Source of the DNA: Caecitellus pseudoparvulus
Taxonomy: Eukaryota; Protista; Bigyra: Bicosoecida
Assembly (NCBI GenBank): GCA_965644315.1
Contig: CBFFRQ010000013.1
Span: 919,775-983,774 of the forward strand
DNA length: 64,000 nt
Direction: 5' to 3'
This document shows positions 46,806 to 64,000 of this stretch, one piece after another. The notes under the pieces were generated by a model. That model worked only from the letters and a program-made list of their open reading frames with translations, was not told the DNA's origin and did no database searches. Both the position numbers and the translations under genes were made by a program. The stretch's first letter is position 1. The number at the start of each line of letters is the position of its first letter.

Positions 46806-47737
46806 TGCATTGTGACTCCTTTGGGGTGTTGTGATGAAAGTGTGGTAGCACAAGGGGTCAAGAAGGTGGGATACGGTGAGGGTGGTATAATACGCAAGTT
46901 TAAGCTTGCCTTGAAAGACGGGAATGCGCTGCATTACAAGTTCGGCTCAGGCGTGGTTTCTCGTGCCAGTCAAGATGCCCAACTGTTGAGCTCTGCTTTG
47001 AACTCCACGTCATGGGGTCGCCTTTGCTTGCTTGGGGCAAATGGGAGGATCGGCACTACAAAGAAACAGGAATCTTTGTTTGATGCTGTCCCTCTGACAA
47101 CGCTGGGCTGTGCACAAGTGTTGAAATGGAGGTGCTTGGTTCATGACACGCCGCGCACCATCAGCGTTGCAAGAGCAAGCTCGCCGAGGAGCAGTTCGAA
47201 CTGGCTGAGTCTCGGAGTGAGCTGGAATGCTCAAAAGCATGCACAGTTTGAGTTCCCAGATAAGTTCCATGTCTCTGAAGCTCGGAGGAGTGGTTCAGGT
47301 CGAGGCAACGCAAGTACAACGGAAACCAGCGCGAGGTTGAGTGTGCGCCCTACACAAGGGGGTGCTGAAGGTCGCCAGTCAACTTCCCGTTGTACTATAC
47401 ATTGAACTGTATTCTCATTCACATGAAGGCTGGTCTTCTGTCTTCAGTCGAAAGACTCACTGTGTTGACTGGGTTGAGGGAGATCGTTGAGCTGCGGAAG
47501 TTGAACTTCGTCCTCCCATCACTCCGGACCTTCATCGGCCTTGTGCACGCACGTTTTGGATACTTGCACACCTTTCTGGGGTTTCTTTCGCTGCTGTTGC
47601 TATTTTGCCCCAATGGTGCGTGCTTTCGCGACTATGGAGTGTCGTGCACAGCGTTGGAAGTATCAGTTTGGCGCTGGCACTTGTACTTGCACCCGGCACT
47701 TGGATGCCAGCGCTGCCCCTTTGTCAAGTGCACTCTC

Positions 47738-50700
47738 ATGATCAAGTCCGCCCCGCAGGATGTAACGATTGCACATGCTGAGGCCCACGCCGGAGCTGGC
47801 GGGGGTGCTACTCTTGGAAGCTTGCCGCGTGAAGTGATCGATGGGCTGGACAAGCTGCGATGCCTGCCAGGCTGGCCAACAAAGCGAGTTGATGCTCTGC
47901 GCGGCTCAGAAGCCACTGAGAAGGTGGAAACCTCGGCCGGAGAAGAGTCGAGTGCCATAGGGAATCGTGAAGTGGTACGTCTGCTTCAGGATGTTGGGAT
48001 GGCGCTGTTGGATCAGGCTCGCCTCTTGCAAGGGCAGCGCGAGCGAGAAGAAGTATGCCCTGCGTTGCGGTACTTGTCTATCCGTTGCTTCGCTGCGATT
48101 GAGATGCTGCATCAAGTTGGGTCCTGTGCCAGCCCTCATCTCGTGCCGGATGGTGAAGCAATGTGGGGTCCGATGGTGGAGGCTTGGAGCAGCGTACGCG
48201 CCGGACCAGGGCCAGTCGAAGGCGTACTTGCAGATCTTACTCGGTGGTGGTTGGACCGCAAGGCGAGAGGTGTGGCACCTGTTCCCTTTGGGGATGTTTC
48301 CTTGGCAAGTGCTGCAGGAAATACGGCAATCACGGAGGCAGTCACTTCGTTGGGCCGACAAGCAAGTTGGCTTCGTGGATCTGCAGCTGGGCCTATGCAG
48401 TGTGAAGCAGCTGCCAATCAAATTGATCTTGCCGCCTGTGCTGTTCAAAGGTTTCAGGGACTCGTGGGGTCTGCAGGGGCCGTGGATGTGGACGCACTTC
48501 CCCGTGAGGATGGTCTGAACGTGCCAGACGAGCTCAGCTGTTTTACTGCTAAGGACGCGTGCGTTTTCAGCAGCAAAGTCGCACCCGCCGGATCAGAAAG
48601 CAAGAATGTGGAAAAGATCTGCCAATTGGCTCTGCAGCTGCGGAGTGGTTCCGAGGCTCTTGCCCAATGTGCAGGGGGCGTGGCAAAAGCTGAGGCGGCC
48701 CGCATCGCTTTGGGTTTGCCACGCTTTGCCCAAGTACTGCAAAGCGTTGCATTCAGTTCCACGTCACCAGACGAACTCAAGTCATACCAACAAGGTGTTG
48801 GAGATGTTGCGGCAGTGCAGATGCATGGCGAGCGCTGCTGGCCCCTGAGCCGAATGCTGCAAGACGAGGCATGGGGAGACGTTGACAGTGGATCCAAGGA
48901 GTTGTTGTGTGTTCAGGTATTTGGAAGCCTTGCTGTTGCAGAGGTTTGTGGAGTGAAGGTAGACAGTGCCTGCGTGGCTGATTTTGTGGTCGTTGGCCTC
49001 AGCACATGCAGTGTTGGGAGTTTTGTCGAGTCTTTGAGGTCAAGGCGCTGTCATGTGCTCCTCAGTGCCTGCTCAAAGATTTGGGCTGGCCATGCTGCAG
49101 GAGTTTTTCGGGAAAAGGGGGCAGCGCTTGCGCGAGCTATTCTTGGAGCTGGGACTGGGTCAGAAGGGACGATGCAGGAGTCCACATCCTTCGACGATAG
49201 CGACTCCAGTGCCTGGCGAGCAGCCTTGTCAGCCTTTGAAAGGGATTCAATTGCCAACTTTGCAGACTTGTACGCTCTTGTGTTTCTGTCTTGTAAGCTG
49301 AACCGTGGCAGCGTTGAGTCCCTTGAAGAGAGGCTTCGAGCTATTGGGGCTCGGAGCATGAGCATGGCCAGGCAGCAGATGGAACACAGCTGGGCCGCCC
49401 AAGAATCATCCTTCATCACTGCGTGCCGAACGGGCGACGTAGCTTTGCTCCGGCAGCTGCTTGCGCTAGAAGGAGACGAGGCAGTGGGCGTGCATGCGAG
49501 TATCGCGGTGGAACTTGAGGCAGCCTTTTGTTGGGCATGCCACAATGGCCACCTTTGCACTGTACGCGAGCTTCTTGGGTTAACAGGCAAGCGAGAAGTT
49601 GATGTACATGCCGGCAGTAGGTTCGGGTCCGAAGCTGGCTTTCGACTTGCATGCCGAGAAGGCCATGTCGAGGTGGTGAAGGAGCTGCTGGCGTTGAAGG
49701 GGCACCGGGAGATCGATGTGCATGCTGGCGATGATGGCGGATTCCGGCTCGCATGCAAGCGGAGTCATGTAGCTGTTGTGCGTGAGCTCTTGCGGCTTGA
49801 AGGTGGTCGTGCCATTGACTTACGCGCCCATGGGGACCAGTGGCTCAGGTGGGCGTGCGATCATTGCAGCTTCAATGTCGTCTGCGAGCTGCTGACGCAT
49901 TGCACTTCATTGGCGGGCAAGGGGCATGCACGGCACCGAACGCAGGGCAGTGAACAGTCCAGTACAGAGTCAGGTACAGCTGGAAGTGCAACAGGAAGGG
50001 ATTCAGCCACTCAGCCTTTGTTGGACGAACGTGTAGCTAGGTTGGAGAGCAGCGCCCGTGACGGTCTTTCGTTGACACTGCAAGAAAAGGTGGCTCAGCT
50101 TCGTAGAATCGTAGAAGCGGCTGCTCCTTATGTCCATCAAATGGACCACGGGAGCAGCACGGCAAGCTCTGAACCCGCAGCAGACTGTGCAACACCTTGC
50201 AGTGGTAAGCGTTCCATCACTGAAGAGCCAGAAGTGGGATTTGAATCCAAGCAGCAGCAAGCTGCCGGAACACCAAGGATTTCAGTAGCGCAAATCCGAA
50301 ATAGGAAGGCTGCTGCGGATGCGCTGGTGTGGACGGGTGAGGAAGGACGCGCCACAGAAGCGACCGCCATATCCCCGGGAAATGCGTTCGTAGATGAGAG
50401 TGAGGCGACTACAACAGGAACCGAGACTTCTCCAGTATACAAGGCAAGAAGCGTGGGTGCAGGCAAGAACACCCACGCGCATTTGCGAATTGATCTACGC
50501 TCTTGCGATCGTCGCGCTCACGAGTGGGATTTCCCTGCGACTCCCAAAGTCTCCAGTGGGTTGTCCGTGAAGCTTGGCCTTGGGCAAAGCAAGTCCAAGG
50601 GTCTGGACCCAGAGAAGTACATGACTGCTATCAAGTCAGGCAACACAATTGCTCCGTCGGGCGATCCTGAGATTGACGATGATCACAGCGAAGCGCCTAT

Positions 50701-52756
50701 GCGTGGCGACAGTGACACTGTTTCAGATCACCTACAAGCAGCACAGCAGGGAGACGCTACGGAACAGGTATACTTGGGCGTCATGTACAAACATGGCAGA
50801 GGTGTGGCCAGGGATGAATGTGAGGCTGTCCGGTGGTTCAGCGCAGCTGCCGAGCAGGGACTCGCGTTGGGACAAACCAAGCTGGGAATCATGCTCAGAA
50901 CAGGGGTTGGTGTGAGCAAGAATGAGAGCGAGGCTGTTCGTTGGTTCAAAGCTGCAGCAGAGCAGGGCCATGCAGCTGGGCAAGTCAACTTGGGCGACAT
51001 GTACAGGTACGGCAAGGGCGTTGGGAAAGATGTAGGTCAAGCTGTGCGGTGGTATCGGGCAGCAGCTGAGCAGGGGCATCCGCGAGGACAAATCAATCTT
51101 GGGCGAATGTATGCCAGCGGCAGGGGCGTGCCGAAGAATGAGAGTGAGGCTGTGCTGTGGTATCGGGCAGCGGCTGACCAGGGGCATGCAAAGGGGCAGG
51201 TCAAGCTCGGCCGCATGCTCGAGTTCGGCACGGGTGTGGCCAAGGACGAAGCCGAAGCTGTGCGGTGGTATCGGGCAGCAGCGGAGCAAGGAGATGCACG
51301 CGGTCAAGTTAACCTGGGCATAAAGCTCGTCTTTGGCTCTGGCGTGGCCAAGGATGATGCCGAGGCTGTGCGTTGGTTAAGGGCAGCTGCTGAGCAGGGG
51401 CATGCACATGGGCAAGGCAGTTTGGGCACGATGTACGAGTATGGCAGGGGTGTAGAGCAGGACGAAGCCGAGGCTGTGCGGTGGTACCGGGCAGCAGCGG
51501 AGCAGGGTGATGCCCTTGGTCAGTGCAATCTGGCCAACATGTATGGGTTTGGCAAAGGGGTGGAGAAGGACGACGCGGAGGCTGTGCGGTGGTACACGGA
51601 AGCTGCCGGAAAAGGAGTAGCTGATGCACAGTGCTACCTAGGCACGATGTACTCCAACAGCTGGGGCGTGGACCAGGATGAAGTTGAAGCTGTCCGGTGG
51701 TACAGAGCAGCTGCTGCCCAGGGGCACACAGAAGGGCTATGCAACCTTGGGGATGCGCTTGCTCATGGGATTGGTGTGGAGCAGGATGAAACTGAAGCAG
51801 TTCGCTGCTACGAAGCAGCGGCCGGGCAGGGGGACTCAGACGGGCAGTGCAACCTCGGCATTATGTATGAGTACGGTAGGGGAGTGGAGAAAAACGAGGC
51901 AATGGCCGCTGAGTTGTATAGCGCAGCAGCTTTGCAAGGAAATGAGCTTGGCCAGTACTATCTGGGCACGATGTACGAACACGGAAGTGGTGTGGCAAAA
52001 GACGAAGCAGAAGCTGTACATTGGTACAGGGCAGCGGCCGAGCAGGGTCACGCGGATGGGCAGGTCAGTCTGGGCACTATGTACGAGGAGGGAAGGGGTG
52101 TGGAGATGGATGAAGGTGAAGCTTTGCGCTGGTACAGGGCAGCGGCAGAGCAAGGAAATGGGCTTGGGCAGTGCAAATTGGGAATGTTGTATGAGTATGG
52201 CAAGGGAGTGGAAAAGGATGAGGGAGAGGCACTGAAGTGGTACACGGCAGCGGCTGAGCAAGGCGACGAATTTGGCCAATGGTACCTTGGTATCATGTAC
52301 TCGACCGGCAGAGGTGTAGAAGTTAACGAAGCTGAGGCAGTGCGCTGGTCCAGGGCAGCGGCTGAGCAAGGACATGCCGATGGACAGTGCGACCTAGGCT
52401 TGATGCTTGAGTTCGGCAAGGGTGTGGAGAAAGATCACATTGAAGCTGCAAAGTGGTACAGAGAAGCAGCCGATCAAGGTCATGCCCACGGGCAGTGTTA
52501 TCTGGGCACCATGCATGAGCATGGAAAGGGTGTGGACCAGGATTTCGCCGAAGCGGCAAAGTGGTACAGAGCCGCGGCCGAACAAGGACACGCGGGGGCT
52601 CAGTGCCTCCTTGGCAAGATGTACTCGGACGGTCGGGGCGTGGAGCAGGATGACGTTGAAGCCGTGCGGTGGTACAAGGCAGCAGCTGAGCAGGGAGATG
52701 AACTTGGGCAATTCTGCTTAGCGAAAATGCTCGAACATGGCACGAGTGCTGAATGA
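47738..52756 (+). CDS. Ankyrin-repeat plus Sel1-like-repeat protein; last host-type gene before the terminal array
   Basis: About five ankyrin repeats (FRLACREGHVEVVKELL...IDVHA), then 18 complete and one partial 36-aa Sel1 repeats (GQ.NLG.MY..G.GV.KD..EAVRWYRAAAEQG). Likely start MIKSAP at 47738. Confidence 0.9.
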   Translation: MIKSAPQDVTIAHAEAHAGAGGGATLGSLPREVIDGLDKLRCLPGWPTKRVDALRGSEATEKVETSAGEESSAIGNREVVRLLQDVGMALLDQARLLQGQREREEVCPALRYLSIRCFAAIEMLHQVGSCASPHLVPDGEAMWGPMVEAWSSVRAGPGPVEGVLADLTRWWLDRKARGVAPVPFGDVSLASAAGNTAITEAVTSLGRQASWLRGSAAGPMQCEAAANQIDLAACAVQRFQGLVGSAGAVDVDALPREDGLNVPDELSCFTAKDACVFSSKVAPAGSESKNVEKICQLALQLRSGSEALAQCAGGVAKAEAARIALGLPRFAQVLQSVAFSSTSPDELKSYQQGVGDVAAVQMHGERCWPLSRMLQDEAWGDVDSGSKELLCVQVFGSLAVAEVCGVKVDSACVADFVVVGLSTCSVGSFVESLRSRRCHVLLSACSKIWAGHAAGVFREKGAALARAILGAGTGSEGTMQESTSFDDSDSSAWRAALSAFERDSIANFADLYALVFLSCKLNRGSVESLEERLRAIGARSMSMARQQMEHSWAAQESSFITACRTGDVALLRQLLALEGDEAVGVHASIAVELEAAFCWACHNGHLCTVRELLGLTGKREVDVHAGSRFGSEAGFRLACREGHVEVVKELLALKGHREIDVHAGDDGGFRLACKRSHVAVVRELLRLEGGRAIDLRAHGDQWLRWACDHCSFNVVCELLTHCTSLAGKGHARHRTQGSEQSSTESGTAGSATGRDSATQPLLDERVARLESSARDGLSLTLQEKVAQLRRIVEAAAPYVHQMDHGSSTASSEPAADCATPCSGKRSITEEPEVGFESKQQQAAGTPRISVAQIRNRKAAADALVWTGEEGRATEATAISPGNAFVDESEATTTGTETSPVYKARSVGAGKNTHAHLRIDLRSCDRRAHEWDFPATPKVSSGLSVKLGLGQSKSKGLDPEKYMTAIKSGNTIAPSGDPEIDDDHSEAPMRGDSDTVSDHLQAAQQGDATEQVYLGVMYKHGRGVARDECEAVRWFSAAAEQGLALGQTKLGIMLRTGVGVSKNESEAVRWFKAAAEQGHAAGQVNLGDMYRYGKGVGKDVGQAVRWYRAAAEQGHPRGQINLGRMYASGRGVPKNESEAVLWYRAAADQGHAKGQVKLGRMLEFGTGVAKDEAEAVRWYRAAAEQGDARGQVNLGIKLVFGSGVAKDDAEAVRWLRAAAEQGHAHGQGSLGTMYEYGRGVEQDEAEAVRWYRAAAEQGDALGQCNLANMYGFGKGVEKDDAEAVRWYTEAAGKGVADAQCYLGTMYSNSWGVDQDEVEAVRWYRAAAAQGHTEGLCNLGDALAHGIGVEQDETEAVRCYEAAAGQGDSDGQCNLGIMYEYGRGVEKNEAMAAELYSAAALQGNELGQYYLGTMYEHGSGVAKDEAEAVHWYRAAAEQGHADGQVSLGTMYEEGRGVEMDEGEALRWYRAAAEQGNGLGQCKLGMLYEYGKGVEKDEGEALKWYTAAAEQGDEFGQWYLGIMYSTGRGVEVNEAEAVRWSRAAAEQGHADGQCDLGLMLEFGKGVEKDHIEAAKWYREAADQGHAHGQCYLGTMHEHGKGVDQDFAEAAKWYRAAAEQGHAGAQCLLGKMYSDGRGVEQDDVEAVRWYKAAAEQGDELGQFCLAKMLEHGTSAE
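50756..52741 (+). repeat. 108-nt coding tandem repeat (18.5 Sel1 units)
   Basis: Units counted from the translation. Confidence 0.9.
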
Positions 52757-52865: not shown

Positions 52866-52923
52866 TAGGACTAAATGCAGTGCAAACTCTTGTTTTCACC
52901 ACACTCACCTCACAAACGCTCCT
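52866..52923 (-). mobile_element. Decayed ~60-bp remnant of the retrotransposon 3' terminus
   Basis: TAGGACTAAATGCAGTGCAAACTCTTGTTTTCA-CCACACTCACCTCACAAACGCTCCT aligns with 52955-53013 at about 50 of 59 positions by manual alignment. Confidence 0.7.
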
Positions 52924-52942
52924 GCGCCGCGCCATTTCGCCC

Positions 52943-52958
52943 TTAGGTTAGGGTTAGG
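52943..52958 (+). repeat. Interstitial telomeric relic TTAGG-TTAGGG-TTAGG
   Basis: Read directly; it lies at the 3' junction of the retrotransposon. Confidence 0.85.
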
Positions 52959-55900
52959 AATCAATGCATTGCAACCTCTTGTTTTCAACCACACTCACTT
53001 CACACTTGCTCCTCGAGAGAAGCGGGCTGCGGCGCTCGCTTGCTCAGTGCACATAACTTGCACAGAGCATGGTGAGTCACCATGTAAAGTAAGCTTGTTC
53101 TTTTCAGAACATGGTACTTTAATGTTCTTCGTCGTCATTCAGGCGTTCGGCGCCTGTTGGGTGAGTTGGGCGCGGGTTTCGGCCCTGGCGTGTTGGGGGC
53201 GCCGCGGCGACCCCGCGCACACCGCGCCACCCCGCGACCCAACACGGCCCCGCCGCGCGTTACGACACTGGGAATTTCAGAATAACATCTTAGAATGCAC
53301 TATCAACCCAAAGCAAGCTTTTATCACTCACTTTCTTCCTCCTCTGCTGCGCCATCTCGCCCGGGAGCGAGGTGGCTTGGCATGGTCCAGGCGGCAGGCG
53401 TGGCAGCCGTGTAGCGGGCTCGCCGCGCGAGGTCCGCGGCGGGCTGCCCGCGTTCCACGCCAGCGCCCTGAAGTTGAGCTTCTACCACGTGATTAAACAC
53501 GGCCCCACAGTACCGGATGCACGTTTTCAGGACTTGCGTCCATCCGGGAGGTGCGGCGACCACGTCGTGGGGCCAGTAGAAACTTTTGCCGTCTGCGGCA
53601 CCCCCAGAATTCGGGGGCAACTTTTGCCGCAAGGGCCCAGCAAATGCCTCCAGTGCTTCAGCGGCTTTCACTGGGTCTTGGTCCAGTAGATGGGTCGAGT
53701 TTCGGACTGGAACACGCAACCGTTCCATGTGTGGCGCCGTGAGGGCAGCACAAGTTGCGTGATCCCAGTCCGCACACTCGGGTGCTCCCGTGGGCCACTG
53801 ACCACACAAGGCGAGCCGCTTCAGCAACGCCCGGGTGTTCTGGCATGAGATACGTGTTCCAGTGTCTAGTTGACAGCCAGCCTGCACCGCTGCGTGCAGG
53901 CTTTCTGGAATGGTGACGTATCTCAGGGGTGGGTGCCGGAGGGCCTCGGCCGTCAGCCGCCTCGGCACAGCGGTTGACTTTGCCGCTTCGTCACAGTCCT
54001 GCATGTTCTGCGCTGCCTCTCGGAAGAACGCCAGACGTTCTAGAGATACTGAAGGGCAGTCCAGCAGAATGTGGTCTAAAATAAGCTCCGCATCGCGAAT
54101 TTCGGGGTCCAAACACAGAGGACATGCGATATACGGTGTCAGAGCAGCACCCGGATGCAGGAGCTGCTGTGTCTGCAGCATGAACACCTTCGGCAACGGG
54201 CTTCTGTCAGGGTGACAGGCGGTCCAAGCACTACAGGGAACACTTGGAATCGGATGAAGTTCCGCGTGTGTTCGCGCTCGGATGTCCAAATGGTGAGGCC
54301 TCGGCGAGAGCGTCGGATTCACTCTTTTGTCGCCTGTTTCTCCTCGAGGCGAGTGGCCCGGGTACTCAGCAGGTAGGAACATGGTCTCCCGGTACATGTC
54401 TGTTCTTTGCGTTCGTGCAATGAACAAGTACGACTCCAGGAGGTCCAAACGCTGCCTCAACGTGAAAGTGGCTGGGAAGTCAACCGACCTGTCGAACCTT
54501 GCAGAGGCCACAGGAACACTCGTTGCGACGAACAACTTCGGGCCGTTCTGGGCCATGTTCTTGGGCAGCTTTAAGGCCTTTTGGAGAGATCGCATCTCTT
54601 CGTGTAGGGCCGTGGTGTCCCGATTTCCGCTCAAATCGTGCCACCTCGCGGCCATGGCCAGAACGCCGAACACACCTTCGTGGTACCCCAACAGGCGCAG
54701 CTCTAAGAGAGGTCTGACGGCCCACGGGGTGCCTGTGCCGTAGAAGGTGTGTTTCGAGGCCGCTACGTCTTCCAAAAGGAGGGCCGACGGGACCCTCTCG
54801 TCCGGGACGTCCGCGACCATCGTTCGGCCCTGCCATACGCTCACCATCAGGATCTTGAAAGCAGGCGAATCCACCACAGCCTGCTTAAGTGTCCGGACTA
54901 TGAAACCAATGCGACTTCGCATCGTGCGCATGTGCGTCAGAGGAATACCAGCCGCTGCAAGGACCGCGCCGTGTTGGACGCGCATCGGATGAAGCTGAAA
55001 ACCGAACACGGATTTGTCCAGAACACTGCCAACGGCATTGTCGCACATGCGGTTGGGCATGAGCGAGTGTTTGCCGGTGATTGCCAGTGTGTAGTCCGCT
55101 GCAGCGACCACTGAGGTCCTCAAAAGGCGGTGCGCTGCCGACGGGGCGAGCCATTCGGCCGCAGAAATCGCCACAGAAGAATGCCCAGCCATGCTCAAGG
55201 TGGTTGCAGCATTTCGACGAGCTACTTTATGCTGTATGAACAGCTTGGCTTGCAGCGGTGTTCCCAAGTACTCGTATTCGTCCACGAGAGGGATCCGCTT
55301 TCCGTCGACTGTTAGCGCCTGTGACTCCGCAGCAAGGCGTTTCTTGGCGCTGACTATCTGCACATGGAGTCGGCTCATGCGATACGCAAGTCGTGGTGTT
55401 GGTCGCATGATCAGGATGGCCGACTTGGAGGCGTTGACTCTGAGCCCCAGCAGAGCCCCGACCCGCCTGACGATGGTGATCGCACGGATCACGGCGGCCG
55501 CGCTGTCTACGACGAGCCCCAGGTCGTCTGCGTACAGCGCATGGCTGAATCGGGGTCCAGTGTGGACTGGGTCCCCCTTTGAATGCAGTAGCTTGACCCC
55601 CAGTGTCGGTTTTTTCCCCCGTTCCCTCCCCCGGAATGTGGTTCAAGGAGAGTGCACGGGACACCAGGTCGACCGCGATCTTGAATAGGAGGGGCGAGAG
55701 GACGCTTCCTTGCGCTACGCCACTGGTCGCATGAATGGCCTCGGTCATGCCGTGTTCCGTGTCGATGCAGACGCTGGCGTTCTCGATGAAGTCTACGAGG
55801 AGTCGCCTGGTGGTGCGGTCCAGCGGCAGGTGCTCTAGCAGCACGCGCAAGGCCCTGTGATCAACGGAGTCGAAAGCCTTTCGAAAGTCGATAAACACGG

Positions 55901-58370
55901 CGAAAACGGCCAGTGGAGGGCTGTTCTTGGGTCTAATGTCCCGGGAACACGTCGCGGTCGCTGTTCTCAGTGCTGTTCTTGGTCCTTCGAGCATCGCAAA
56001 AACGTGCTCGTGGCACCCGCGGCCTCTGGAGAACCCTGCTTGCTGCGGAGTGATGAGGCCTTGGACGGCTTGTTCCAGCCTGAATGCAAGAACACTGTTC
56101 ACCAGCTTGCTCAGCGGGCTCCGGCACACGATCAGCCGGTACGTCGACGCGACCCCGGGGGTCTGACCCTTCTTTGCGAGCAGTACTCCCTTGCCGTGGT
56201 GCAGCTCCCGTGGCAGGAGACCGTCTCCCTTCACCAGGTGCTGTAGCGTCTCTGCGAGGCATCTCAGAACATCCGGGCCTGCGTAGGCCCAGTGTTCGGC
56301 CTTGAGTTCCGACAGACCACTGCTGCGGTGTTTCCGCAGTGACTTGGTCGCTCTGAGGACCGCCTCAAAGTTGAAGATTTTCGGCTCTTCAGAGGCTCCC
56401 GAGTCACTCCCTGCGGAAATTGGAGGCAGCAGACCCTCAAAGTGGGCTGCACTGAGTCCGTCCAAGTCGGTACTGGGTGGCTGTGCTATCACAGATCTCA
56501 TCTGAGAATGCAAGATTTTCACCACCTGGGCCGGCTCGGTCACCGCCTGGCCGGCCTGCAGCGCGAGGCCAGTTGGCGCCAGGCCTCCGGCTCTTCGACC
56601 CAGCGCACGGCAGATGAGTTGATGCGCCGTGAAAGGGTGCTCCTTGGCGAGCATGTTGATATGCTTCCTTAGCCTGGAGGCGGTCTCCTTCTTAAAATCG
56701 GCCTTCGCGCGAGCCACCTCGTTGTGAGCCGCCCTGCAGCGCAGGGTCGATTCTCGGAGACTAACTTCTAAACTAGAGATCGCCAGGGCACGCCGCCTTG
56801 CAACCGAGTCACCTGAAGGGTGTTCTTCCAGATGGCGTGGTCGGAGTCGTCTCAACTTGCGCCGAAGTCTCCGGACCTCTGCAACTTTTTGGTTGCGTTT
56901 GCGGCGGGCCGCCCGCAGGCCATGGTCGGCCCTGGAACTCCTGCCCCTGGCGAAGACAGCGCATGCCGCTTTGTGCAGGACTCGGCCGATGTGACCCAAG
57001 GAGGGTGGTATGTGCGGTGTTCCGGCCCGCGGCCCCTGGGTGTTCTTGGCACTCTGGGCCAGCCTGTCGCCAGCATGTCTGGCGTACTGGGTGACCCGGG
57101 TGGAGGTTTGGAACACACCGGGGTCTTCGAATGGGGCCACCGGCCTGCGAGTGTTCCGTGTTCGGCCTGGGGGGGCTGTGGCACCGTGCAGCGTGACCGT
57201 ACAATGCACCAAAGCGTGGTCCGAGAGGAGCAGGTCCTGTGGGGACCTGGCGTCGCCCGTGCTGAAGGTGGTCACCACTCTTCCGTGTTCCGCGCGTTCG
57301 TACACGGGCCTGGACAGGCATATGTGGTCCAGGCACCGTCCGTACTTCATGTGGGTCGCGTTTCCTGACCCCGGACTCGGCAAGAGACCGTGCTGGTGGG
57401 TCCATCTGTCGAAGGATCCGACGTCGGATGCCGGCTTCTTCGGTGTTCCAGGACAGGACCACCCCATCCGCTCCCAGAACTGCATCCCCCCTGTTCCGGG
57501 ATGGCAGTTGAAGTCGCCAAGGAACGCCAGCTGGTGGGTGGGGCCGTAGCGGCTCGCCAAGAGCTCGAGGCCAGCCCAGACTTCGGCCCGGTCTGGCAGG
57601 GCGCCCGTGTCCACCTGTTCCACGTCCATGTCCCGTGTTCCAGTTGAAGGTGGAACACCGGGACGGTGGTCCTGACCTCGTTCAGGCGGGCTAACTCTCG
57701 CGTGCTTCCGCGTGATGCTGTGCGGCCGCAGTACCGGCATGTACACGCCTACCACCAGCAGCGGCGGTGACACCGCGTCCACCTCCGCCACCACAAGGCA
57801 GCGCCCATCCACCTGGCTCTCCTGCTCCGGTAGGAACCTGGGTCGGAGCCGGTCGTCCACGATCATGGCCACCTCGCTGCGGCCGCCGTCCTGTTGGACT
57901 GGTGGGCGGTACGACCTCATGCCGTGCTGGGCCAGTGACGGCATGCCGACCCCGCCCGGCTCCGTCACCACCAGGACCAGGGCGGCCGTATCCGGGGTCA
58001 CTGACTCCACAGCGGACAGCACCAGCTCCGGGTACATGCTGTGGGACTTCCACGTGTTCCACGTCGCCAGCGACACCGAGATGGGTCTCGTGCGTACTGG
58101 GCCGCCCTCAGCCCAAGTTCCGCACGGCTGCCCCGCGGCGCCTTCAGGGCTGTTCGGCGGCACCTCCGCGGAACCGAGAACACCCGTTGCGGCACCAGGG
58201 GCAGCGTGACCTCCTACAACGTCTACGAAATCCATGGCCTGGGATGCAGGTCGCATGGACCACACCACGCCCATGGCCGCTTAAAAAAAAGGGAATGGGA
58301 TGGCGGAGCATCCTACCACAGTGGTTACGCTTCGCTTCACAACTCTTACGAGTCCCGATGCTACGCATCT
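52959..58370 (-). mobile_element. Telomere-associated non-LTR retrotransposon, single pol ORF (APE-RT-CCHC), no ORF1, no poly(A) tail
   Basis: 3' end abuts the telomeric relic; ~360-nt 3' UTR; ~5-kb pol frame; ~95-nt 5' leader that ends abruptly at AT-rich DNA. Confidence 0.88.
53324..58274 (-). CDS. AP-endonuclease/reverse transcriptase/CCHC polyprotein (~1650 aa), broken by one extra base at ~55610-55640
   Basis: APE: ATWNT, VTEP, GVYMP, LGDFNCH, LDHI, SDH. RT: YRLI....LSKL, QAGF..GRGC.EH, FIDFRKAFDSVDH, GVAQGSVLSPLLF, then in the next frame LGVKL..FSHALYADDL, GLRVNASKS and YEYLG. C-terminal CPLC...DHILLDCP. Confidence 0.92.
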
Positions 58371-58989
58371 AGTTTAATGGTTCATTTAATAGTTCATTTT
58401 ACAGTAATTTAATATTCAATAAAATATACATTTTTTAAGATAAATAAAAATCCTATTTTTCCCTTTTACATTAAGGCCTCTTAGAACGACTTAATAATTT
58501 ATAAATAATAAAAAGTGTAATAGTATATACCTTCAAAAAATAAAATATCCAAAATATCCAAAAATCCAAAATATCCAAGAATTTTTAAAGTTCATAAAAA
58601 GTTATCATTTTACCAAAATAATTTGAAAGTGTCGGGAAACTGGATTTTTAGGATAATGGGGAAAATGTGGCATAGAGTATGGTAGGTGCAATATGTGCCA
58701 TCAAAAGAAGTATGGGCGGTGTGAGCCCCCTTCAAGAACAATTTAATTGCAACACTTAAAAATAAGAACCTACATGAGGAAGTTGAGAATGAGAAATAAG
58801 CATTTAAATTTTTTAGTATATTTAATTATTAAAGTTAATTATACAATTTTAAAAACGTGATTTTAGTTTAAAGGTTGCCTTAATTACACTATATAATTCA
58901 TCATAGGAGGAAAAGATATTTAGTAGATCGTGTCCACAAGCGGAGATAAGCTCCAGCCTTTCTTTTTCACATGATTTTTATATTGAAAC

Positions 58990-59266
58990 CTAACTAAAGA
59001 ACCTTTTATTGTAATCTCTTATAGCATCTTGTAAATTGTCATTTTCACCCCATAATAAAAAGAAGCTTAAATAACCGGCTCGTTTTGCGTCTCCTGTGTT
59101 AAGGTCTTTTATATGTCGTTTATGATAGCTAGAACGTTTTTTTTTTGTCTTTATGGTCTATATATGTGTTTCCTCCTACTTGTCCAAAATGTGTTTTAGT
59201 TCCATCATCAAATATAGCCGTACATCTTTTATTCTTTCGTGTGCTTGGTATAATATCAATAATCAT
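58990..59266 (-). CDS. Small basic viral protein of the NCLDV/virophage/PLV type (DUF5754-like), frameshifted in an A10 run
   Basis: Missing from the ORF track. Removing one base from the T10 run at 59137-59146 gives MIIDIIPSTRKNKRCTAIFDDGTKTHFGQVGGNTYIDHKDKKKRSSYHKRHIKDLNTGDAKRAGYLSFFLLWGENDNLQDAIRDYNKRFFS*, matching the recalled S.rk.K...hFG..g..y..HkD...r..Y..RH....aG.ls..lLW pattern. Confidence 0.75.
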
Positions 59267-59285
59267 ATATTATATACTATATTCT

Positions 59286-59867
59286 TTAATTGCTGATTCT
59301 ATCCATTTTATATGTTATTTCAACGTCTATGTTTTCATTTATATCACTTTTAACGGATACATTCCAAGTTGGAAAATTACCAGCGCTTGAAACTGTCATA
59401 ACCTTACTTAATGTAATTTGTCCATAGTTTTTAGCGGCTTCAGCTTCCATAAATATACGCCCTATAGTTGTATCCACGCCTGAAGCAGAAGCAGGAACTG
59501 TCATTCTACCAAATACAACAGCTGTTGTTTGTCCTGGTCCGTCTATTACTAAATTAATAGTAGCACTTAAAACATACGTTCCTGTTTGATATGATTCAAT
59601 GGGGATAACAGCATCCATAGCAAACGTTTTCCAGGTGTTAGCGGTGAAAACATCATTAAGAGCTATTTTATAACTTTGAAATTTTGACGTTCTTTCGTAT
59701 AATTGCCCGTAATTTATGCCGTGATATTGTGATATTCCTGCTCTTAATTGTTCTATCCTATTATTACTCATATTCAATTCTCTAATTGTTTTAATTTCGT
59801 TATTAGTTACAGAAAATATCTGAATTGGATTTCCTCCATTGTTACAAAAAAAGGCGTGTTGTGAGCT
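59286..59867 (-). pseudogene. 5'-truncated beta-rich viral structural (fibre/spike-like) gene
   Basis: ORF 59286..59777 stays open upstream (SSQHAFFCNNGGNPIQIFSVTNNEIKTIRELNMSNNRIEQL...) right into the telomeric repeats. LNMSNNRI resembles fibre-shaft repeats and the C-terminal domain is beta-strand-rich. Confidence 0.55.
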
Positions 59868-59927
59868 GGTTAGGGTTAGGGTTAGGGGTAGGGTTAGGGT
59901 TAGGGTTAGGGTTAGGGTTAGGGTTAG
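59868..59927 (+). repeat. Interstitial telomeric tract, ~10 TTAGGG units with one GTAGGG variant
   Basis: Read directly. Confidence 0.98.
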
Positions 59928-62850
59928 CTACTCAATGCATTGCAGATTGCCTCCATGCAGGCTACATCATGGTACAGCTTGGGCTTGGACATGTGGTGCC
60001 ACCTGCGCCACAACAGAATGCAGTGACACAGACACCACGACGGCACCGCTTGCACGGCTTTGCGACTAGCACAGACTCGTGTCCGTTGTATAAGTCGCCG
60101 TCTGTCTTGGCGCTTCAGCGCCCGCCCCGGTGGGATGGTCTTGAGGTGTAGGTCCAGGTCTCGGTCCACTCTTGTCTTGTCCGTCCAGTCCAGTCTCGTC
60201 CGTCTCGGTCCGATGTCCAGGGGTGGAGACCCGACTTGCTTGGCTTGGGTGGCGGTGTGGGCTGGAGGATATGGACTCGACACGGACTGGGTGTTGCTGA
60301 GATGCAAGCACACGACCCAGCCCGGCTGTCCCTTCGGCTCAGGTTTGGGGGCGGCCTCACAGATCTTGCTGCAAGTGCCTTCCCCTTCCACTGAGCCGAG
60401 TCCTGATGTGTTGGTATCGATGTTGGGTTGGTGATGGTGAGGTTGGGTTGGACTTTCCAATGTCCGATGTCAGCTATGTGCGTCGGTCGCGACACAAAGC
60501 TTCAGTCATGTGTGGCACAGGGAGTATGCCCCCACAGGTGACTTACATCAGGCGTCCACCCATCTGCCCGATCGAGATGTGGGGCACATCCTTGACCTTG
60601 GGCAGGCGACCCTCGCCGTCTTCAGGCACCAGCCGCTTGAGGGGGTCCTTGACCTCAGCCTCCAGGGTGGCGGCCTGCTGTCGGGTCATCCGCCCATGAG
60701 GCATGGCCACCCTTGTGCCCTTGCCAGCGATGAGGGTCTGGGGGTGCACGGTGCCGTCGGTGGCCTTGTGAGGCAGGGGGGGGAAGTCATCTCGGAGAGA
60801 CTGGAGTGCCCCTCGAAGCCTGTCCCGGAAGGGTGCTGGACTGCCCGCCTCGGGTGTGGTCCAGATCCGGTACAAGACGTTGATGCCTTCGGCTGCCAGC
60901 CGGGTCATGCACTTGTGCAGGGGCAGCTCGTCATGGAGGTCAGGGATGTCGGGGTTCCACAGCACCAGCTTGCCTCGATCATGGTCGACGAGGATGAGCT
61001 GCAGATGGGCCGTGTTGTCGGTCCACACCTCTCGAAGTGCGAAGGCATACAGCACTCCGTCGAGGTGCCCCTCTTGGTCACCCTCTTCATCAACCTGGCT
61101 GGGGTCGACGCCGGCCTGGCCAAGGTCATCATGCCCGGCTGGGGCACGGTACCCTTGGTTGATGCGGTCGATGAGCAGGTGCAGGCCGGGAAGCAGGACT
61201 GGTGGTGTACCTGGGGCCAGGAAGGTGTCATCCGGCGAGTGCTGGTGCAGCATGTTGCGGAAGACGGCCACCCGTTGCCCGTCTGAGCGGAAGGGGGAGG
61301 GTGGCTTCTGGCCGACGTCCATGATGTCCGAGCTGGACGAGTCACTGACCACCCCCTCCAGCTGCCTGACCATGTGCTTGAAGGCAAGCTGGGCAGCGTT
61401 GATGGTGGCTGCATGCTGGAGTAGGAGGAGGTCCCCAGCCTCGAAGACCCTCTCCCCTGCTGCCGTCTCGAGACAGGCCTGGACACAGGCCCGCCCCCCC
61501 ACGTTAGAGTACACGTGGGTCGATGACAGCAGGTCGGCCAGAGGGCCAGGCTTGATGGGGTACTCGGCCAGGTGCTCGGGTGTCCGCACACTGTCATGAA
61601 GAGGCACCACCCTTGTGATCACCTCCCATGCTGCTGCTGCAGACGGCCGATACCGGTGCACCTCGGGGCTTGCCTCGCCCGACGGGGTGGGGGACGGCCA
61701 CTTGCGGTCGACGCCCCGCTGCACCCTTGATGAAGGCAACATGGCATGCACCACAGGGGTGGTGACGGTATCTTTGGGTGAGCCTTGGGTGGCAGGTGGT
61801 GAGGTTGGTCGAGGTGCAGGTGGCCGGACGTTCTTGATGAAGACGTCCTCGAAGGTGAGGGATCGTCCGGCTGACTTGCCCTTTCCTCGCTTGCCTCGAC
61901 GGGTCTTCTTCTTCTTCGGTGCCTTGTCGAGCTGAGTGTCAGTCCAGGTCGATGGTGTCTTGGTGTCGACAGGTGCATCACCCTCGGAGGGGACGGATTG
62001 TCTGACACTGGGACGGACGGCTTGGGCTGGCACGGGGCCATGGTCGAAGTGGGACCTAACGAGGCACATGACCTTGGCAACATCACCTGACTGGCAGGCG
62101 ATTTCGGTTGCTTCCTTGGTCACTTGGTGGGCCACTTGGATGGCGGTGGGGTGGGCCTTCACCTTCACTTTCGCCTTCGCCGATGCGAACTGCTTGGTGT
62201 TGGTGTAGGCCACGGCGACGAACCCACCTTGGCCGACTCGAATGGCGAAGTCGTCCTCTTGAGCAGCAAGAATGCGAAGTTGACGTGCCACTGTTGGTGA
62301 ATCACCCTCACTTCCGAGCGTGACGAGGATGGTTGGCGATCCGGTGGGTCCCTGGCGCAGGGCCGCATTGGCGTTGCCGAATTCCGCACTCAGCCCTGGG
62401 ATCAGCCGTTCGGCGGCTTCCCCATAGACCTCGAGCCACATGTCCCGTGCCGAAGATGAACTATCATGATCAGTCTTGGGCAGGGGTCCTCCAAGCTCGA
62501 AGGTGCGTGCGGCACCCCGACGTGGCATGTCAGTGAAGACACCTGTTCTGGGGCCGAGCACTTGCTTGCGCTTCAGGCACCCCTCCACGAAGAGGACCCC
62601 CAGGACTTGATCCACTTGGGCGTTCATGATGCTTGTCAATGATGCTTTTGATGTCGATCCCAGGTGCATGCCCCGACCGAGGGCGCAAACTGGGAGCCAC
62701 GGTGCGATGGTGTGCGGAATTCGCACTACCCCGCCCCGGTGCGCACCACCCAACCAGCAAGCACTGTGCAACACCACACTTGGGTGCACGAGCGCCTGGA
62801 TTAGGCAATGTTAGCACTTCACAACTTGTGATTAGCTTGACATTTGGAAA
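59928..62850 (-). mobile_element. 2.9-kb RT-less element embedded between telomeric repeats; putative non-autonomous telomeric retroelement
   Basis: TTAGGG on both sides; one long intronless ORF; 3' terminal motif and 5' leader motif shared with the upstream retrotransposon. Confidence 0.65.
60543..62669 (-). CDS. Hypothetical ~700-aa protein, possible ORF1/gag-like
   Basis: Long ORF (first ATG 62669) with an RNP1-like GGFVAVAY, a basic KKKKTRRGKRGKGK stretch and a Pro/Thr/Ser linker. No RT or endonuclease motifs. Confidence 0.65.
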   Translation of the reverse strand: MHLGSTSKASLTSIMNAQVDQVLGVLFVEGCLKRKQVLGPRTGVFTDMPRRGAARTFELGGPLPKTDHDSSSSARDMWLEVYGEAAERLIPGLSAEFGNANAALRQGPTGSPTILVTLGSEGDSPTVARQLRILAAQEDDFAIRVGQGGFVAVAYTNTKQFASAKAKVKVKAHPTAIQVAHQVTKEATEIACQSGDVAKVMCLVRSHFDHGPVPAQAVRPSVRQSVPSEGDAPVDTKTPSTWTDTQLDKAPKKKKTRRGKRGKGKSAGRSLTFEDVFIKNVRPPAPRPTSPPATQGSPKDTVTTPVVHAMLPSSRVQRGVDRKWPSPTPSGEASPEVHRYRPSAAAAWEVITRVVPLHDSVRTPEHLAEYPIKPGPLADLLSSTHVYSNVGGRACVQACLETAAGERVFEAGDLLLLQHAATINAAQLAFKHMVRQLEGVVSDSSSSDIMDVGQKPPSPFRSDGQRVAVFRNMLHQHSPDDTFLAPGTPPVLLPGLHLLIDRINQGYRAPAGHDDLGQAGVDPSQVDEEGDQEGHLDGVLYAFALREVWTDNTAHLQLILVDHDRGKLVLWNPDIPDLHDELPLHKCMTRLAAEGINVLYRIWTTPEAGSPAPFRDRLRGALQSLRDDFPPLPHKATDGTVHPQTLIAGKGTRVAMPHGRMTRQQAATLEAEVKDPLKRLVPEDGEGRLPKVKDVPHISIGQMGGRLM

Positions 62851-64000
62851 GTTAGGGTTAGGGTTAGGGTTAGGGTTAGGGTTAGGGTTAGGGTTAGGGT
62901 TAGGGTTAGGGTTAGGGTTAGGGTTAGGGTTAGGGTTAGGGTTAGGGTTAGGGTTAGGGTTAGGGTTAGGGTTAGGGTTAGGGTTAGGGTTAGGGTTAGG
63001 GTTAGGGTTAGGGTTAGGGTTAGGGTTAGGGTTAGGGTTAGGGTTAGGGTTAGGGTTAGGGTTAGGGTTAGGGTTAGGGTTAGGGTTAGGGTTAGGGTTA
63101 GGGTTAGGGTTAGGGTTAGGGTTAGGGTTAGGGTTAGGGTTAGGGTTAGGGTTAGGGTTAGGGTTAGGGTTAGGGTTAGGGTTAGGGTTAGGGTTAGGGT
63201 TAGGGTTAGGGTTAGGGTTAGGGTTAGGGTTAGGGTTAGGGTTAGGGTTAGGGTTAGGGTTAGGGTTAGGGTTAGGGTTAGGGTTAGGGTTAGGGTTAGG
63301 GTTAGGGTTAGGGTTAGGGTTAGGGTTAGGGTTAGGGTTAGGGTTAGGGTTAGGGTTAGGGTTAGGGTTAGGGTTAGGGTTAGGGTTAGGGTTAGGGTTA
63401 GGGTTAGGGTTAGGGTTAGGGTTAGGGTTAGGGTTAGGGTTAGGGTTAGGGTTAGGGTTAGGGTTAGGGTTAGGGTTAGGGTTAGGGTTAGGGTTAGGGT
63501 TAGGGTTAGGGTTAGGGTTAGGGTTAGGGTTAGGGTTAGGGTTAGGGTTAGGGTTAGGGTTAGGGTTAGGGTTAGGGTTAGGGTTAGGGTTAGGGTTAGG
63601 GTTAGGGTTAGGGTTAGGGTTAGGGTTAGGGTTAGGGTTAGGGTTAGGGTTAGGGTTAGGGTTAGGGTTAGGGTTAGGGTTAGGGTTAGGGTTAGGGTTA
63701 GGGTTAGGGTTAGGGTTAGGGTTAGGGTTAGGGTTAGGGTTAGGGTTAGGGTTAGGGTTAGGGTTAGGGTTAGGGTTAGGGTTAGGGTTAGGGTTAGGGT
63801 TAGGGTTAGGGTTAGGGTTAGGGTTAGGGTTAGGGTTAGGGTTAGGGTTAGGGTTAGGGTTAGGGTTAGGGTTAGGGTTAGGGTTAGGGTTAGGGTTAGG
63901 GTTAGGGTTAGGGTTAGGGTTAGGGTTAGGGTTAGGGTTAGGGTTAGGGTTAGGGTTAGGGTTAGGGTTAGGGTTAGGGTTAGGGTTAGGGTTAGGGTTA
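62851..64000 (+). repeat. Terminal telomere (TTAGGG)n
   Basis: Uninterrupted TTAGGG array to the end of the window, G-rich strand pointing to the end. Confidence 0.99.

What the first reader, a model, noticed from the sequence alone, without database searches (positions are those of the whole stretch)
52866..62850. Candidate two-component telomere-targeted retroelement system: a pol-only LINE plus an RT-less single-ORF partner
Seen: two otherwise dissimilar GC-rich elements lie head-to-tail on the minus strand, 5' ends toward the telomere. Each has its 3' end joined to TTAGGG repeats with no poly(A). Element A (52959-58370) encodes only APE-RT-CCHC, with about 95 nt upstream and no ORF1. Element B (59928-62850) encodes only a basic ~700-aa protein with no RT. 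They share a 13-nt 3' terminal motif and a 10-12-nt 5' motif. Known analogues: Drosophila HeT-A/TART, Magnaporthe MoTeR1/MoTeR2 and silkworm SART/TRAS. Inference: here the ORF1-like and pol functions may be split over two separately mobilised RNAs that both target telomerase-made TTAGGG ends. I do not know of this arrangement in a protist. Caveat: A may have lost an ORF1 when the viral DNA was joined.
Basis: partly seen in the sequence, partly recalled or inferred. Interest (0 to 1): 0.9.

Follow-up and report, generated by a model that had tools for sequence, protein, structure and literature searches.

The report
Paired telomere-targeted retroelements in a protist
At the end of a chromosome of a GC-rich marine protist that still makes ordinary TTAGGG telomeres, a reverse-transcriptase-encoding jumping gene and a second, unrelated jumping gene that encodes only an orphan protein sit head-to-tail inside the telomere repeats, a fruit-fly-like (HeT-A/TART) or rice-blast-like (MoTeR1/2) arrangement not yet listed for such organisms.

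Summary
The window ends in about 190 perfect TTAGGG repeats. Proximal to them, all in minus-strand sense with 5' ends toward the chromosome end, lie element B, a short TTAGGG tract, a 1.5-kb AT-rich DNA-virus fragment, element A, a 16-nt telomeric tract and an A-like 3' remnant.

A encodes one APE–RT–CCHC reading frame, broken by one frameshift, and has no room for an ORF1. B encodes a single 694-aa protein with no detectable relative among 1.84 billion protein representatives, yet it is under purifying selection (pN/pS 0.17).

A and B share only an exact 13-mer 2–5 nt from their 3' ends and an exact 10-mer 25–27 nt from their 5' ends.

Five independent metagenome contigs carry B at 97% identity. 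Four of them hold a full-length B between CCCTAA repeats. They show B–B tandems and intact B distal to two differently 5'-truncated A copies, once with no telomere repeat between them.

This supports target-primed addition to G-strand ends, with B probably copied in trans by A's reverse transcriptase. That B supplies an ORF1-like function is untested.

Closest analogues are MoTeR1/MoTeR2 and HeT-A/TART. I rate it a new variant of a known kind.

The parts
52866..52942 (-). A' : remnant of a diverged A-like element. It comprises about 19 nt matching the end of A's ORF plus the last 58 nt of the 3' end. It is joined directly to unique host DNA at 52865/52866 and keeps its terminal CCTA.
   Evidence: 13-mer with 2 mismatches at 52872-52884
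52943..52958 (+). 16-nt telomeric tract (TTAGG TTAGGG TTAGG) between A' and A. The last TTAGG may be the copy of A's own terminal CCUAA.
52959..58370 (-). Element A, a 5.4-kb non-LTR retrotransposon with a 96-nt 5' leader, one APE-RT-CCHC reading frame and a ~365-nt 3' UTR. It has no poly(A) and no ORF1.
57180..58080 (-). APE-like endonuclease region of A. The motifs WN, VTE, YMP, GDFN, LDH and SDH are present, and the sequence is very divergent.
   Evidence: (Exo_endo_phos E 1.9e-4, below cut-off); no pairwise or PDB match
55280..56357 (-). Reverse-transcriptase domain of A, with YADD at 55534. The frame shifts by one base somewhere in 55546-55642.
54053..54124 (-). C-terminal CCHC knuckle of A (CPLC-x13-H-x4-C). 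No REL endonuclease follows it.
52961..52973 (-). Shared 3' motif TGCAATGCATTGA in A, 2 nt from the CCTAA/telomere junction.
58335..58344 (-). Shared 5' motif AGTTGTGAAG in A, starting 26-27 nt from A's 5' boundary.
58371..59852 (-). AT-rich (about 33% GC) fragment of a DNA virus. It holds an orphan 163-aa ORF (59777->59289) and a frameshifted Tlr6F/DUF5754 gene (59266->58993). It is followed distally by a GC-rich 17-mer (59853-59869).
   Evidence: PMC12220804 for DUF5754 = Tlr6F of PLVs, NCLDVs and phages
59870..59927 (+). Interstitial telomere tract of about 10 TTAGGG units with one variant pair (TTAGGGG TAGGG). The last 4 nt (59924-59927) equal B's terminal CTAA.
59928..62850 (-). Element B, 2.9 kb, with a 223-nt 5' UTR, a 694-aa ORF and a 615-nt 3' UTR. 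It has no RT and no poly(A).
60546..62627 (-). B ORF encoding an orphan protein with a basic patch at residues 235-255. It is under purifying selection.
   Evidence: (pN/pS 0.17)
59932..59944 (-). Shared 3' motif TGCAATGCATTGA in B, 4-5 nt from the telomere junction.
62817..62826 (-). Shared 5' motif AGTTGTGAAG in B, starting 25-26 nt from B's 5' boundary.
62851..64000 (+). Terminal telomere of about 191 perfect TTAGGG repeats running off the window.

Best explanation
A and B are two families of telomere-targeted non-LTR retroelements living in the telomerase-made TTAGGG telomeres of a GC-rich marine protist.

Proposed cycle:
- Each element is transcribed from its own 5' end. An internal promoter is inferred from the near-invariant 5' UTR of B and from the shared motif at about +26.
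- Each RNA ends, without poly(A), in the shared 13-mer followed by a few bases and 4-5 nt complementary to the G-strand (A ..UCCUAA, B ..GCUAA).
- This tail pairs with a G-strand 3' end. That end is the natural overhang, an eroded or broken end, or a nick made by A's APE domain. The 3' OH then primes reverse transcription by A's RT.
- The cDNA extends the chromosome with the element's 5' end outermost, and telomerase then resumes on the new end in a fixed phase.

A is the autonomous member. B has no polymerase and is copied in trans because it carries the same 3' recognition motif. It persists because its own protein, of unknown biochemical role, is useful to the pair or to itself.

Shown: architecture, polarity, junctions, copy diversity, selection on B, and lack of an RT in B.

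Inferred: trans-mobilisation, end-priming, promoter function, and any ORF1-like role of B.
For: Architecture and polarity: telomeric tracts flank every unit in one orientation.

B junctions were compared across six copies: the window plus L001, L002, L003, L004 and L006.
- All end at the same nucleotide (..GAGTAGCTAA).
- They abut different proximal sequence: 2.5, 4.5, about 10 or at least 8 repeats, or none.
- All five readable B 5' ends are full length and join the repeats in the same phase, CCTAAC|TTTCC.

Other arrangements:
- L001 shows a B-B tandem.
- Two different 5'-truncated A copies lie proximal to intact B. In L006 the truncation is at about window 54515, capped by repeats. In L003 it is at about 55457, joined directly to B's CTAA. 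Both are 98% identical to window A.
- A' is joined to unique DNA and keeps CCTA. This shows the telomere-like terminal bases are element-encoded and that ends without repeats can be used.

Shared motifs: both are exact, far beyond chance and at matching offsets.

Coding content:
- A has a LINE-type RT.
- B has none, and no relative in 1.84e9 representatives.
- B's ORF has 40 synonymous against 20 non-synonymous differences, pN/pS 0.17.
- B's 5' UTR has 1 difference in 223 nt, against pS 0.075 in the ORF.
- GC3 of A and B is host-like.
- No A or B copy lies in the 52.8 kb internal to the array.
Against: - No experiment and no read-level data are available.
- Only one full A is available, and it carries a frameshift, so its activity is unproven.
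- A's APE is recognisable only by motifs.
- The 5' motif is not kept in a second B subfamily (L001 2986-3145: AGGTTGTGCAT), so it may not be essential.
- No 5'-truncated B was seen.
- The 3' ends show no structure more stable than shuffled controls.
- Metagenome contigs could collapse several loci.
- Whether priming uses the free end or an APE nick cannot be decided from sequence.
- B's protein function is unknown: both structure models were unusable, with pLDDT 29.5 and 37.9.
Confidence: 0.6

Rival explanations
1. A and B are retroelements, but they enter as TRAS/SART do. A's sequence-specific APE nicks the G-strand inside duplex telomeric repeats, and insertion is internal to the tract rather than onto the chromosome end.
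For: - All APE catalytic motifs are retained in A.
- Most junctions lie within repeat tracts, and the 3' junction phase is fixed.
- In a quick RT tree, A's nearest neighbours are site-specific elements, two of them sitting in 28S rDNA.
Against: - Two of eight 3' junctions are on non-telomeric DNA: A' on unique sequence and B on truncated A in L003. A telomere-specific nickase would not produce these.
- No target-site duplication can be read in a repeat.
- The element-encoded telomere-complementary tail fits end-pairing equally well.
Confidence: 0.3
2. B is not a retroelement but a Y'-like subtelomeric gene cassette bounded by interstitial telomere repeats. It spreads between chromosome ends by recombination or break-induced replication.
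For: - B lacks any polymerase.
- It lies in tandem, separated by short telomeric tracts, as yeast Y' elements do (established knowledge).
- MoTeR arrays also change by break-induced copying (PMC7367193).
Against: - Both B termini are exact to the nucleotide in all copies, while the proximal partner differs each time.
- B shares terminal motifs at equal offsets with an RT-encoding element.
- B is joined directly to an internal point of A with only its own CTAA between them.
Confidence: 0.08
3. B is autonomous or uses a host enzyme. Either its orphan protein has an unrecognised priming or polymerase activity, or telomerase itself copies B RNA that is paired to the overhang by its CUAA tail.
For: - B is intact and conserved, while the only full A is frameshifted.
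- B's RNA tail is complementary to the telomerase substrate.
- No homology limits what the protein could be.
Against: - No RT motif or Pfam hit appears at any threshold.
- Telomerase is not known to copy kilobase templates (established knowledge).
- The 13-mer shared with A is unexplained under this view.
Confidence: 0.05
4. The array is an assembly artefact, a chimera of telomeric reads, viral DNA and repeats.
For: - Two frameshifts at homopolymers suggest noisy long reads.
- The virus-telomere-B joint at 59853-59927 has no outside confirmation.
Against: - B with both telomeric junctions was assembled independently in four metagenomes, and B-repeat-A and B-A joints in two.
- The polarity is uniform throughout.
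Confidence: 0.03

Closest known systems
MoTeR1 / MoTeR2 of Magnaporthe (Pyricularia) oryzae, and the related FoTeRs of Fusarium
   Same: - An RT-encoding element and an RT-less element share terminal sequences.
- Both are embedded in (TTAGGG)n with no poly(A) and are always oriented 5' end toward the chromosome end.
- Arrays are head-to-tail, separated by half a repeat to more than 20 repeats.
- Intact RT-less copies lie distal to 5'-truncated RT copies, and telomerase re-seeds on truncated ends (PMC7367193, PMC12857005).
   Different: - MoTeR/FoTeR RTs carry a C-terminal REL endonuclease of the CRE/SLACS type. A has N-terminal APE motifs and no REL.
- MoTeR2 shares 860 bp at the 5' end and 77 bp at the 3' end with MoTeR1, and its unique part has no obvious function. 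B shares only 10 and 13 nt with A and encodes a 694-aa protein under selection.
- MoTeRs begin with TTCGGG(TTTGGG)n variant repeats, which are absent here.
HeT-A / TART / TAHRE of Drosophila
   Same: - An RT-less, protein-coding element coexists with an RT-encoding one.
- Arrays are head-to-tail with 3' ends toward the centromere.
- The elements can be added to broken, repeat-free ends (PMC5537684, PMC2173066).
   Different: - Drosophila has lost telomerase and its arrays are the telomere. Here long TTAGGG tracts persist.
- HeT-A encodes a Gag related to TART's Gag, with zinc knuckles. B's protein has no detectable relative and no similarity to A.
- The Drosophila elements end in oligo(A).
TRAS1 / SART1 of Bombyx mori (R1 clade)
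   Same: - They are APE-type LINEs specific for telomeric repeats in a telomerase-positive host.
- They have a fixed orientation and junction phase (PMC7265360, PMC2868851).
   Different: - They have two ORFs (ORF1 with zinc knuckles) and poly(A) tails.
- They have no RT-less protein-coding partner.
- A has a single ORF and no poly(A).
- Clade membership could not be tested for lack of reference sequences.
Endonuclease-deficient Penelope-like elements (Athena, Coprina)
   Same: - Their RNA 3' ends carry reverse-complement telomeric bases that can pair with the G-overhang.
- They sit at chromosome termini with telomerase repeats added on top (Gladyshev and Arkhipova 2007, as cited in PMC10088271; PMC8557442).
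   Different: - Their RT is of the Penelope/telomerase-like type, without an endonuclease.
- A's RT is LINE-type (best solved relatives R2 and L1 ORF2p) and follows an APE-like domain.
LINE/SINE pairs of the stringent type (e.g. UnaL2/UnaSINE1)
   Same: - A non-autonomous RNA is copied because it carries the LINE's 3' terminal recognition sequence (established knowledge; PMC3747384).
   Different: - SINEs are short, non-coding and made by Pol III.
- B is 2.9 kb and protein-coding.

Membership tests
Non-LTR (LINE) retrotransposon, APE type (element A) | LINE-type reverse transcriptase | tested here: met
   Pfam RVT_1 E 8.7e-17. Solved R2 and L1 ORF2p RTs match at E about 1e-10. YADD is present.
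Non-LTR (LINE) retrotransposon, APE type (element A) | N-terminal apurinic/apyrimidinic-like endonuclease | tested here: inconclusive
   The Exo_endo_phos hit scores 21.7 bits, below the 24.5 cut-off, and covers only half the profile. All catalytic motifs are present by eye. There is no pairwise or PDB match.
Non-LTR (LINE) retrotransposon, APE type (element A) | No terminal repeats; variable 5' truncation of copies | tested here: met
   No LTR or TIR was found. Truncated copies start at about 55457 (L003) and about 54515 (L006).
R1 clade telomere-specific LINEs (TRAS, SART) | ORF1 with zinc knuckles upstream of ORF2 | tested here: not met
   A has only a 96-nt leader before its ORF. The 5' end is judged intact from the equal offset of the shared motif.
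R1 clade telomere-specific LINEs (TRAS, SART) | Poly(A) tail at the 3' junction | tested here: not met
   The junction reads ..GCATTGATT|CCTAACCC.
R1 clade telomere-specific LINEs (TRAS, SART) | RT groups with R1-clade references in a phylogeny | not tested
   No labelled reference sequences were obtainable. In a tree of database hits, A is sister (support 0.92) to REL-type R2/R4-like elements, a provisional placement.
MoTeR/FoTeR (CRE-like telomeric retrotransposons) | C-terminal REL (PD-(D/E)XK) endonuclease after CCHC | tested here: not met
   A profile of four REL domains against A's C-terminus gave hhalign probability 0.2%. No RHD or KPD motif is present.
MoTeR/FoTeR (CRE-like telomeric retrotransposons) | Head-to-tail arrays inside (TTAGGG)n with 5' ends distal, plus an RT-less partner sharing the ends | tested here: met
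MoTeR/FoTeR (CRE-like telomeric retrotransposons) | Variant telomere-like repeats at the element's 5' end | tested here: not met
   B starts (C)TTTCCAAATG and A starts (A)GATGCGTAGC.
HeT-A-type Gag-only telomeric element (element B) | Gag/ORF1-like protein (zinc knuckles, or coiled coil plus RRM) | tested here: not met
   B has no Pfam, NCBIfam or PDB hit even at E 10, and no CCHC. An RRM-like beta-alpha-beta-beta-alpha-beta order at residues 99-190 appears only in an unusable model.
HeT-A-type Gag-only telomeric element (element B) | Lacks RT; restricted to chromosome ends; fixed polarity | tested here: met
Dualen/RandI LINEs | Both APE and REL endonucleases in one ORF | tested here: not met
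   REL is absent.
Penelope-like EN-deficient telomeric elements | Penelope-type RT without endonuclease | tested here: not met
   A's RT matches LINE RTs (R2, L1) and follows an APE-like domain.
Yeast Y'-like subtelomeric elements (element B) | Helicase ORF; spread by recombination with flanks | tested here: not met
   B has no helicase domain. Its termini are exact while the proximal partners differ. Recombination itself is not testable here.

The most novel reading that the evidence does not exclude
A telomerase-positive marine alga, possibly one of the most abundant picoeukaryotes of the open ocean, has independently evolved a HeT-A/TART-like partnership. In it, a single-ORF APE LINE supplies reverse transcription. 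A separately transcribed element supplies a new, fold-unknown protein that acts as the RNA-binding or telomere-targeting (ORF1-equivalent) component for both RNAs. Both RNAs pair with the G-overhang through element-encoded telomere-complementary tails, so the pair can heal repeat-free chromosome ends.
Probability: 0.25. Interest if true: 0.85.

Novelty: new variant of a known kind. Interest (0 to 1): 0.68.

Why it matters
Telomere-targeted retroelements are the main natural evidence for how retrotransposition and telomerase relate. A 2023 survey (PMC10088271) lists them only for insects, a lizard, rotifers, Giardia, Chlorella and a fungus.

A pair consisting of an autonomous LINE and a protein-coding but RT-less partner, living on top of working TTAGGG telomeres in a free-living marine protist, would matter in three ways.
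- It would be a third independent case of such a division of labour, after Drosophila and Magnaporthe, and the first with an APE-type LINE.
- It offers short, exact cis-motifs (13 nt at the 3' end, 10 nt at the 5' end) that make trans-recognition directly testable.
- It presents an orphan 694-aa protein, conserved in wild populations, whose role at chromosome ends is unknown.

The junctions on repeat-free DNA also suggest a chromosome-healing activity. The captured viral fragment shows that such ends can trap foreign DNA.

Tried and rejected
Searches for relatives of B:
- The word-indexed search found only 97%-identical copies.
- The exhaustive phmmer search against 1.84e9 representatives found only a 48-aa fragment of B itself.
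- Pfam, NCBIfam and PDB searches at E up to 10 found nothing.
- Scans of prokaryote genome contigs and IMG/VR found nothing.

Structure of B: two AlphaFold runs gave pLDDT 29.5 (whole protein) and 37.9 (C-terminal part). No fold search was run, because matches to such models are meaningless.

Searches for relatives of A:
- The first search drew its words from the low-complexity N-terminus and found nothing.
- The RT-region search gave at most 30% identity.
- The JGI metagenome scan gave one distant hit.
- The exact look-up of A's ORF found nothing on record.
- As a result, no second full-length A was obtained, and the ORF1 question rests on the motif-offset argument.

Other attempts:
- A 3'-junction pattern search in prokaryote and viral collections gave 0 hits.
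- 3'-end RNA folds were no more stable than shuffled sequence.
- Rfam found nothing in the window.
- Two scans for relatives of the viral fragment in IMG/VR found nothing.
- The REL-domain idea for A's C-terminus was rejected.
- Derivation of B from A was rejected: the best protein match had E 0.018 over 102 aa.
- The 142-aa ORF called in B's 3' UTR was rejected as coding, with 2 synonymous against 6 non-synonymous differences.
- The bacterial promoter/terminator scan is irrelevant to a eukaryote.
- Clade assignment of A against R1, RTE, L1/Tx1 and I references could not be done, because no labelled reference sequences were available.

Full report
**Layout**

The window ends in 1150 nt of perfect TTAGGG on the + strand, so it is a right chromosome end. 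Telomeric repeats occur at only two other places, 52943-52958 and 59870-59927, in the same orientation.

Reading inward from the end, every unit is in minus-strand sense with its 5' end toward the telomere:
- element B (59928-62850);
- about ten repeats;
- a 1.5-kb stretch of about 33% GC (58371-59852) plus a GC-rich 17-mer;
- element A (52959-58370);
- a 16-nt telomeric tract;
- a 77-nt A-like remnant, A' (52866-52942), joined directly to unique DNA.

Next inward is a very large Sel1/ankyrin-repeat ORF (47390-52756). The internal 52.8 kb is 55-70% GC, has ordinary eukaryotic domains (anoctamin, SRCR, glycosyltransferases), and holds no other copy of A or B.

**Element A**

One reading frame runs from the ATG at 58274.
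- It has an N-terminal region with the full set of APE motifs. This region is so divergent that Pfam scores it below threshold, and it has no pairwise or PDB match.
- It has a clear LINE reverse transcriptase: RVT_1 at E 8.7e-17, and solved R2 and L1 ORF2p RTs at E about 1e-10.
- It has YADD, a long C-terminal region and a CCHC knuckle.
- The frame shifts by one base between 55546 and 55642, in a run of homopolymers. The viral gene nearby also has a homopolymer frameshift, so both may be sequencing errors. This cannot be decided here.
- Nothing follows the CCHC that resembles a REL endonuclease.
- The best RT relative among 5.8 billion proteins is 30% identical.
- In a quick tree of the N-terminal half of the RT with 111 database hits, A is sister (local support 0.92) to four R2/R4-like REL elements. 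Of the three whose contigs were read, two sit in 28S rDNA. I treat this only as a hint that A belongs to a deep, site-specific lineage. No labelled clade references were available.
- A' shows that a second A subfamily with a shorter 3' UTR existed.

**Element B**

B has a single ORF of 694 aa (62627->60546).
- No family, solved structure or relative was found, apart from its own copies.
- Both structure predictions were unusable.
- The protein is nevertheless real. Against metagenome copies it has 40 synonymous and 20 non-synonymous differences, pN/pS 0.17.
- The 142-aa ORF that gene callers placed in its 3' UTR behaves as non-coding.
- The 223-nt 5' UTR differs at one position, whereas synonymous sites differ at 7.5%. 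This argues for a functional 5' region.
- The protein is only mildly basic overall (pI 8.57), with one Lys/Arg patch.
- It shows no similarity to A's protein.

**Shared ends**

A and B share TGCAATGCATTGA 2-5 nt from their 3' junctions and AGTTGTGAAG 25-27 nt from their 5' boundaries. The 2-nt uncertainty comes from bases that could belong to either neighbour.
- Each word occurs exactly twice in 64 kb.
- Shuffles reach the 3' match 0 times in 5000, and the 5' match at a similar offset 7 times in 5000.
- A caveat: a second B subfamily (L001 2986-3145) has 3 changes in that motif.

**Outside evidence**

B's protein led to five contigs from five metagenome assemblies: ENA ERZ1643211, ERZ23495255, ERZ17161837 and ERZ23796855, and JGI 3300045056. 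B is 97% identical to the window copy.
- All four contigs that include the 5' end (L001-L004) show a full-length B, with the repeat joined in the phase CCTAAC|TTTCC.
- All show the 3' end ..GAGTAGCTAA.
- The sequence proximal to B differs each time: at least 8 repeats (L002, L004); 2.5 repeats and then another B (L001); 4.5 repeats and then A truncated at about 54515 (L006); and no repeat at all, with B's CTAA abutting A truncated at about 55457 (L003).
- The A fragments are 98% identical to the window's A.
- Exact element ends combined with variable partners are the signature of repeated insertion events, not of copying a segment with its flanks.
- Together with A' on unique DNA, the L003 junction shows two things. 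The last 4-5 telomere-like bases are encoded by the elements. And ends lacking repeats can be extended.

**Mechanism**

The polarity (antisense strand continuous with the G-strand) is what target-primed reverse transcription from a G-strand 3' OH produces.

I propose that the RNA's short CUAA/CCUAA tail pairs with that end. A's RT, recognising the 13-mer, copies both A and B RNA. Telomerase then extends the new end; the constant phase at B's 5' end fits alignment of the same terminal bases on the telomerase template.

Whether the primer is the free end or an APE nick is open. The two repeat-free junctions favour end-priming for at least some events, while the retained APE motifs favour nicking. 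Trans-mobilisation of B and any ORF1-like role of its protein are inferences.

**The AT-rich segment**

It carries a frameshifted gene of family DUF5754 (E 7e-11). One paper equates this family with Tlr6F and describes it as conserved in polinton-like viruses, giant viruses and phages (PMC12220804). It also appears in an algal giant virus genome (PMC12085832). Beside it is an orphan 163-aa ORF.

No close relative was found in IMG/VR. Both genes have the polarity of A and B. That would fit either capture of viral DNA by an uncapped end, or template switching from the 5' end of A RNA. I cannot tell which.

**Host**

The composition (about 63% GC), TTAGGG telomeres and near-identical copies in ocean metagenomes fit a pelagophyte such as Pelagomonas calceolata (PMC9481584; bioRxiv 10.1101/2024.10.30.620910). 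This is an inference only. Neither paper mentions retrotransposons.

**Comparison and novelty**

- The closest system is MoTeR1/MoTeR2. It has the same polarity, the same spacing by half a repeat to more than 20 repeats, the same 'intact RT-less copy distal to a truncated RT copy', and no poly(A) (PMC7367193).
- The differences from MoTeR are the endonuclease type, the minimal shared ends, and a selected protein in the RT-less partner. That last point recalls HeT-A.
- TRAS/SART share the APE type and telomerase coexistence, but they have ORF1 and poly(A).
- The survey in PMC10088271 lists no such element for stramenopiles, haptophytes or other marine protists, and my searches found none.
- I therefore rate the finding a new variant of a known kind.

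Noticed in passing
window 58371-59869: A 1.5-kb fragment of a DNA virus (frameshifted Tlr6F/DUF5754 gene plus an orphan 163-aa ORF, about 33% GC) is trapped between A's 5' end and a telomere tract. It has the same polarity as the retroelements. A GC-rich 17-mer of unknown origin sits at its distal edge.
   Followed up: partly
L001 14-24 and L002 130-140: The telomere tract distal to B contains CCTAGCTAACCC, that is, the last four bases of B (TAGC) embedded in the repeats. This may be a trace of an aborted B reverse transcription or of an extremely truncated copy.
   Followed up: no
L001 2986-3145: A second, clearly diverged B subfamily lies in tandem proximal to a standard B. Its 5' UTR differs and changes 3 of 11 positions of the shared 5' motif.
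   Followed up: partly
L009 1-168 and 4900-5047; L011 4290-4318: A's nearest RT neighbours in the quick tree are REL-endonuclease LINEs. These two are inserted in 28S rDNA just after ..GCGCATGAATGG (the L009 flank is confirmed as LSU rRNA by Rfam). That is roughly midway between the classical R2 and R1 sites, which from memory is an R4-like site.
   Followed up: partly
window 47390-52756 (+): The last host gene before the array is a 1788-aa open frame with at least 18 Sel1 repeats plus ankyrin repeats. It shows up as a 108-nt tandem periodicity in the DNA.
   Followed up: partly
window 53014-53348: About 335 nt of A's 3' UTR, including a GC-rich palindromic stretch at 53150-53260, have no counterpart in the older A' remnant. 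This is either an insertion in A or a deletion in A'.
   Followed up: partly
window 55546-55642 and 59143-59153: Both frameshifts in this region (A's RT and the viral DUF5754 gene) fall in homopolymer runs. This pattern is expected from long-read consensus errors, so A may be intact in the organism.
   Followed up: no
window 59882-59893: The interstitial tract between the viral DNA and B has one variant repeat pair (TTAGGGG TAGGG), whereas the terminal 191 repeats are perfect.
   Followed up: no
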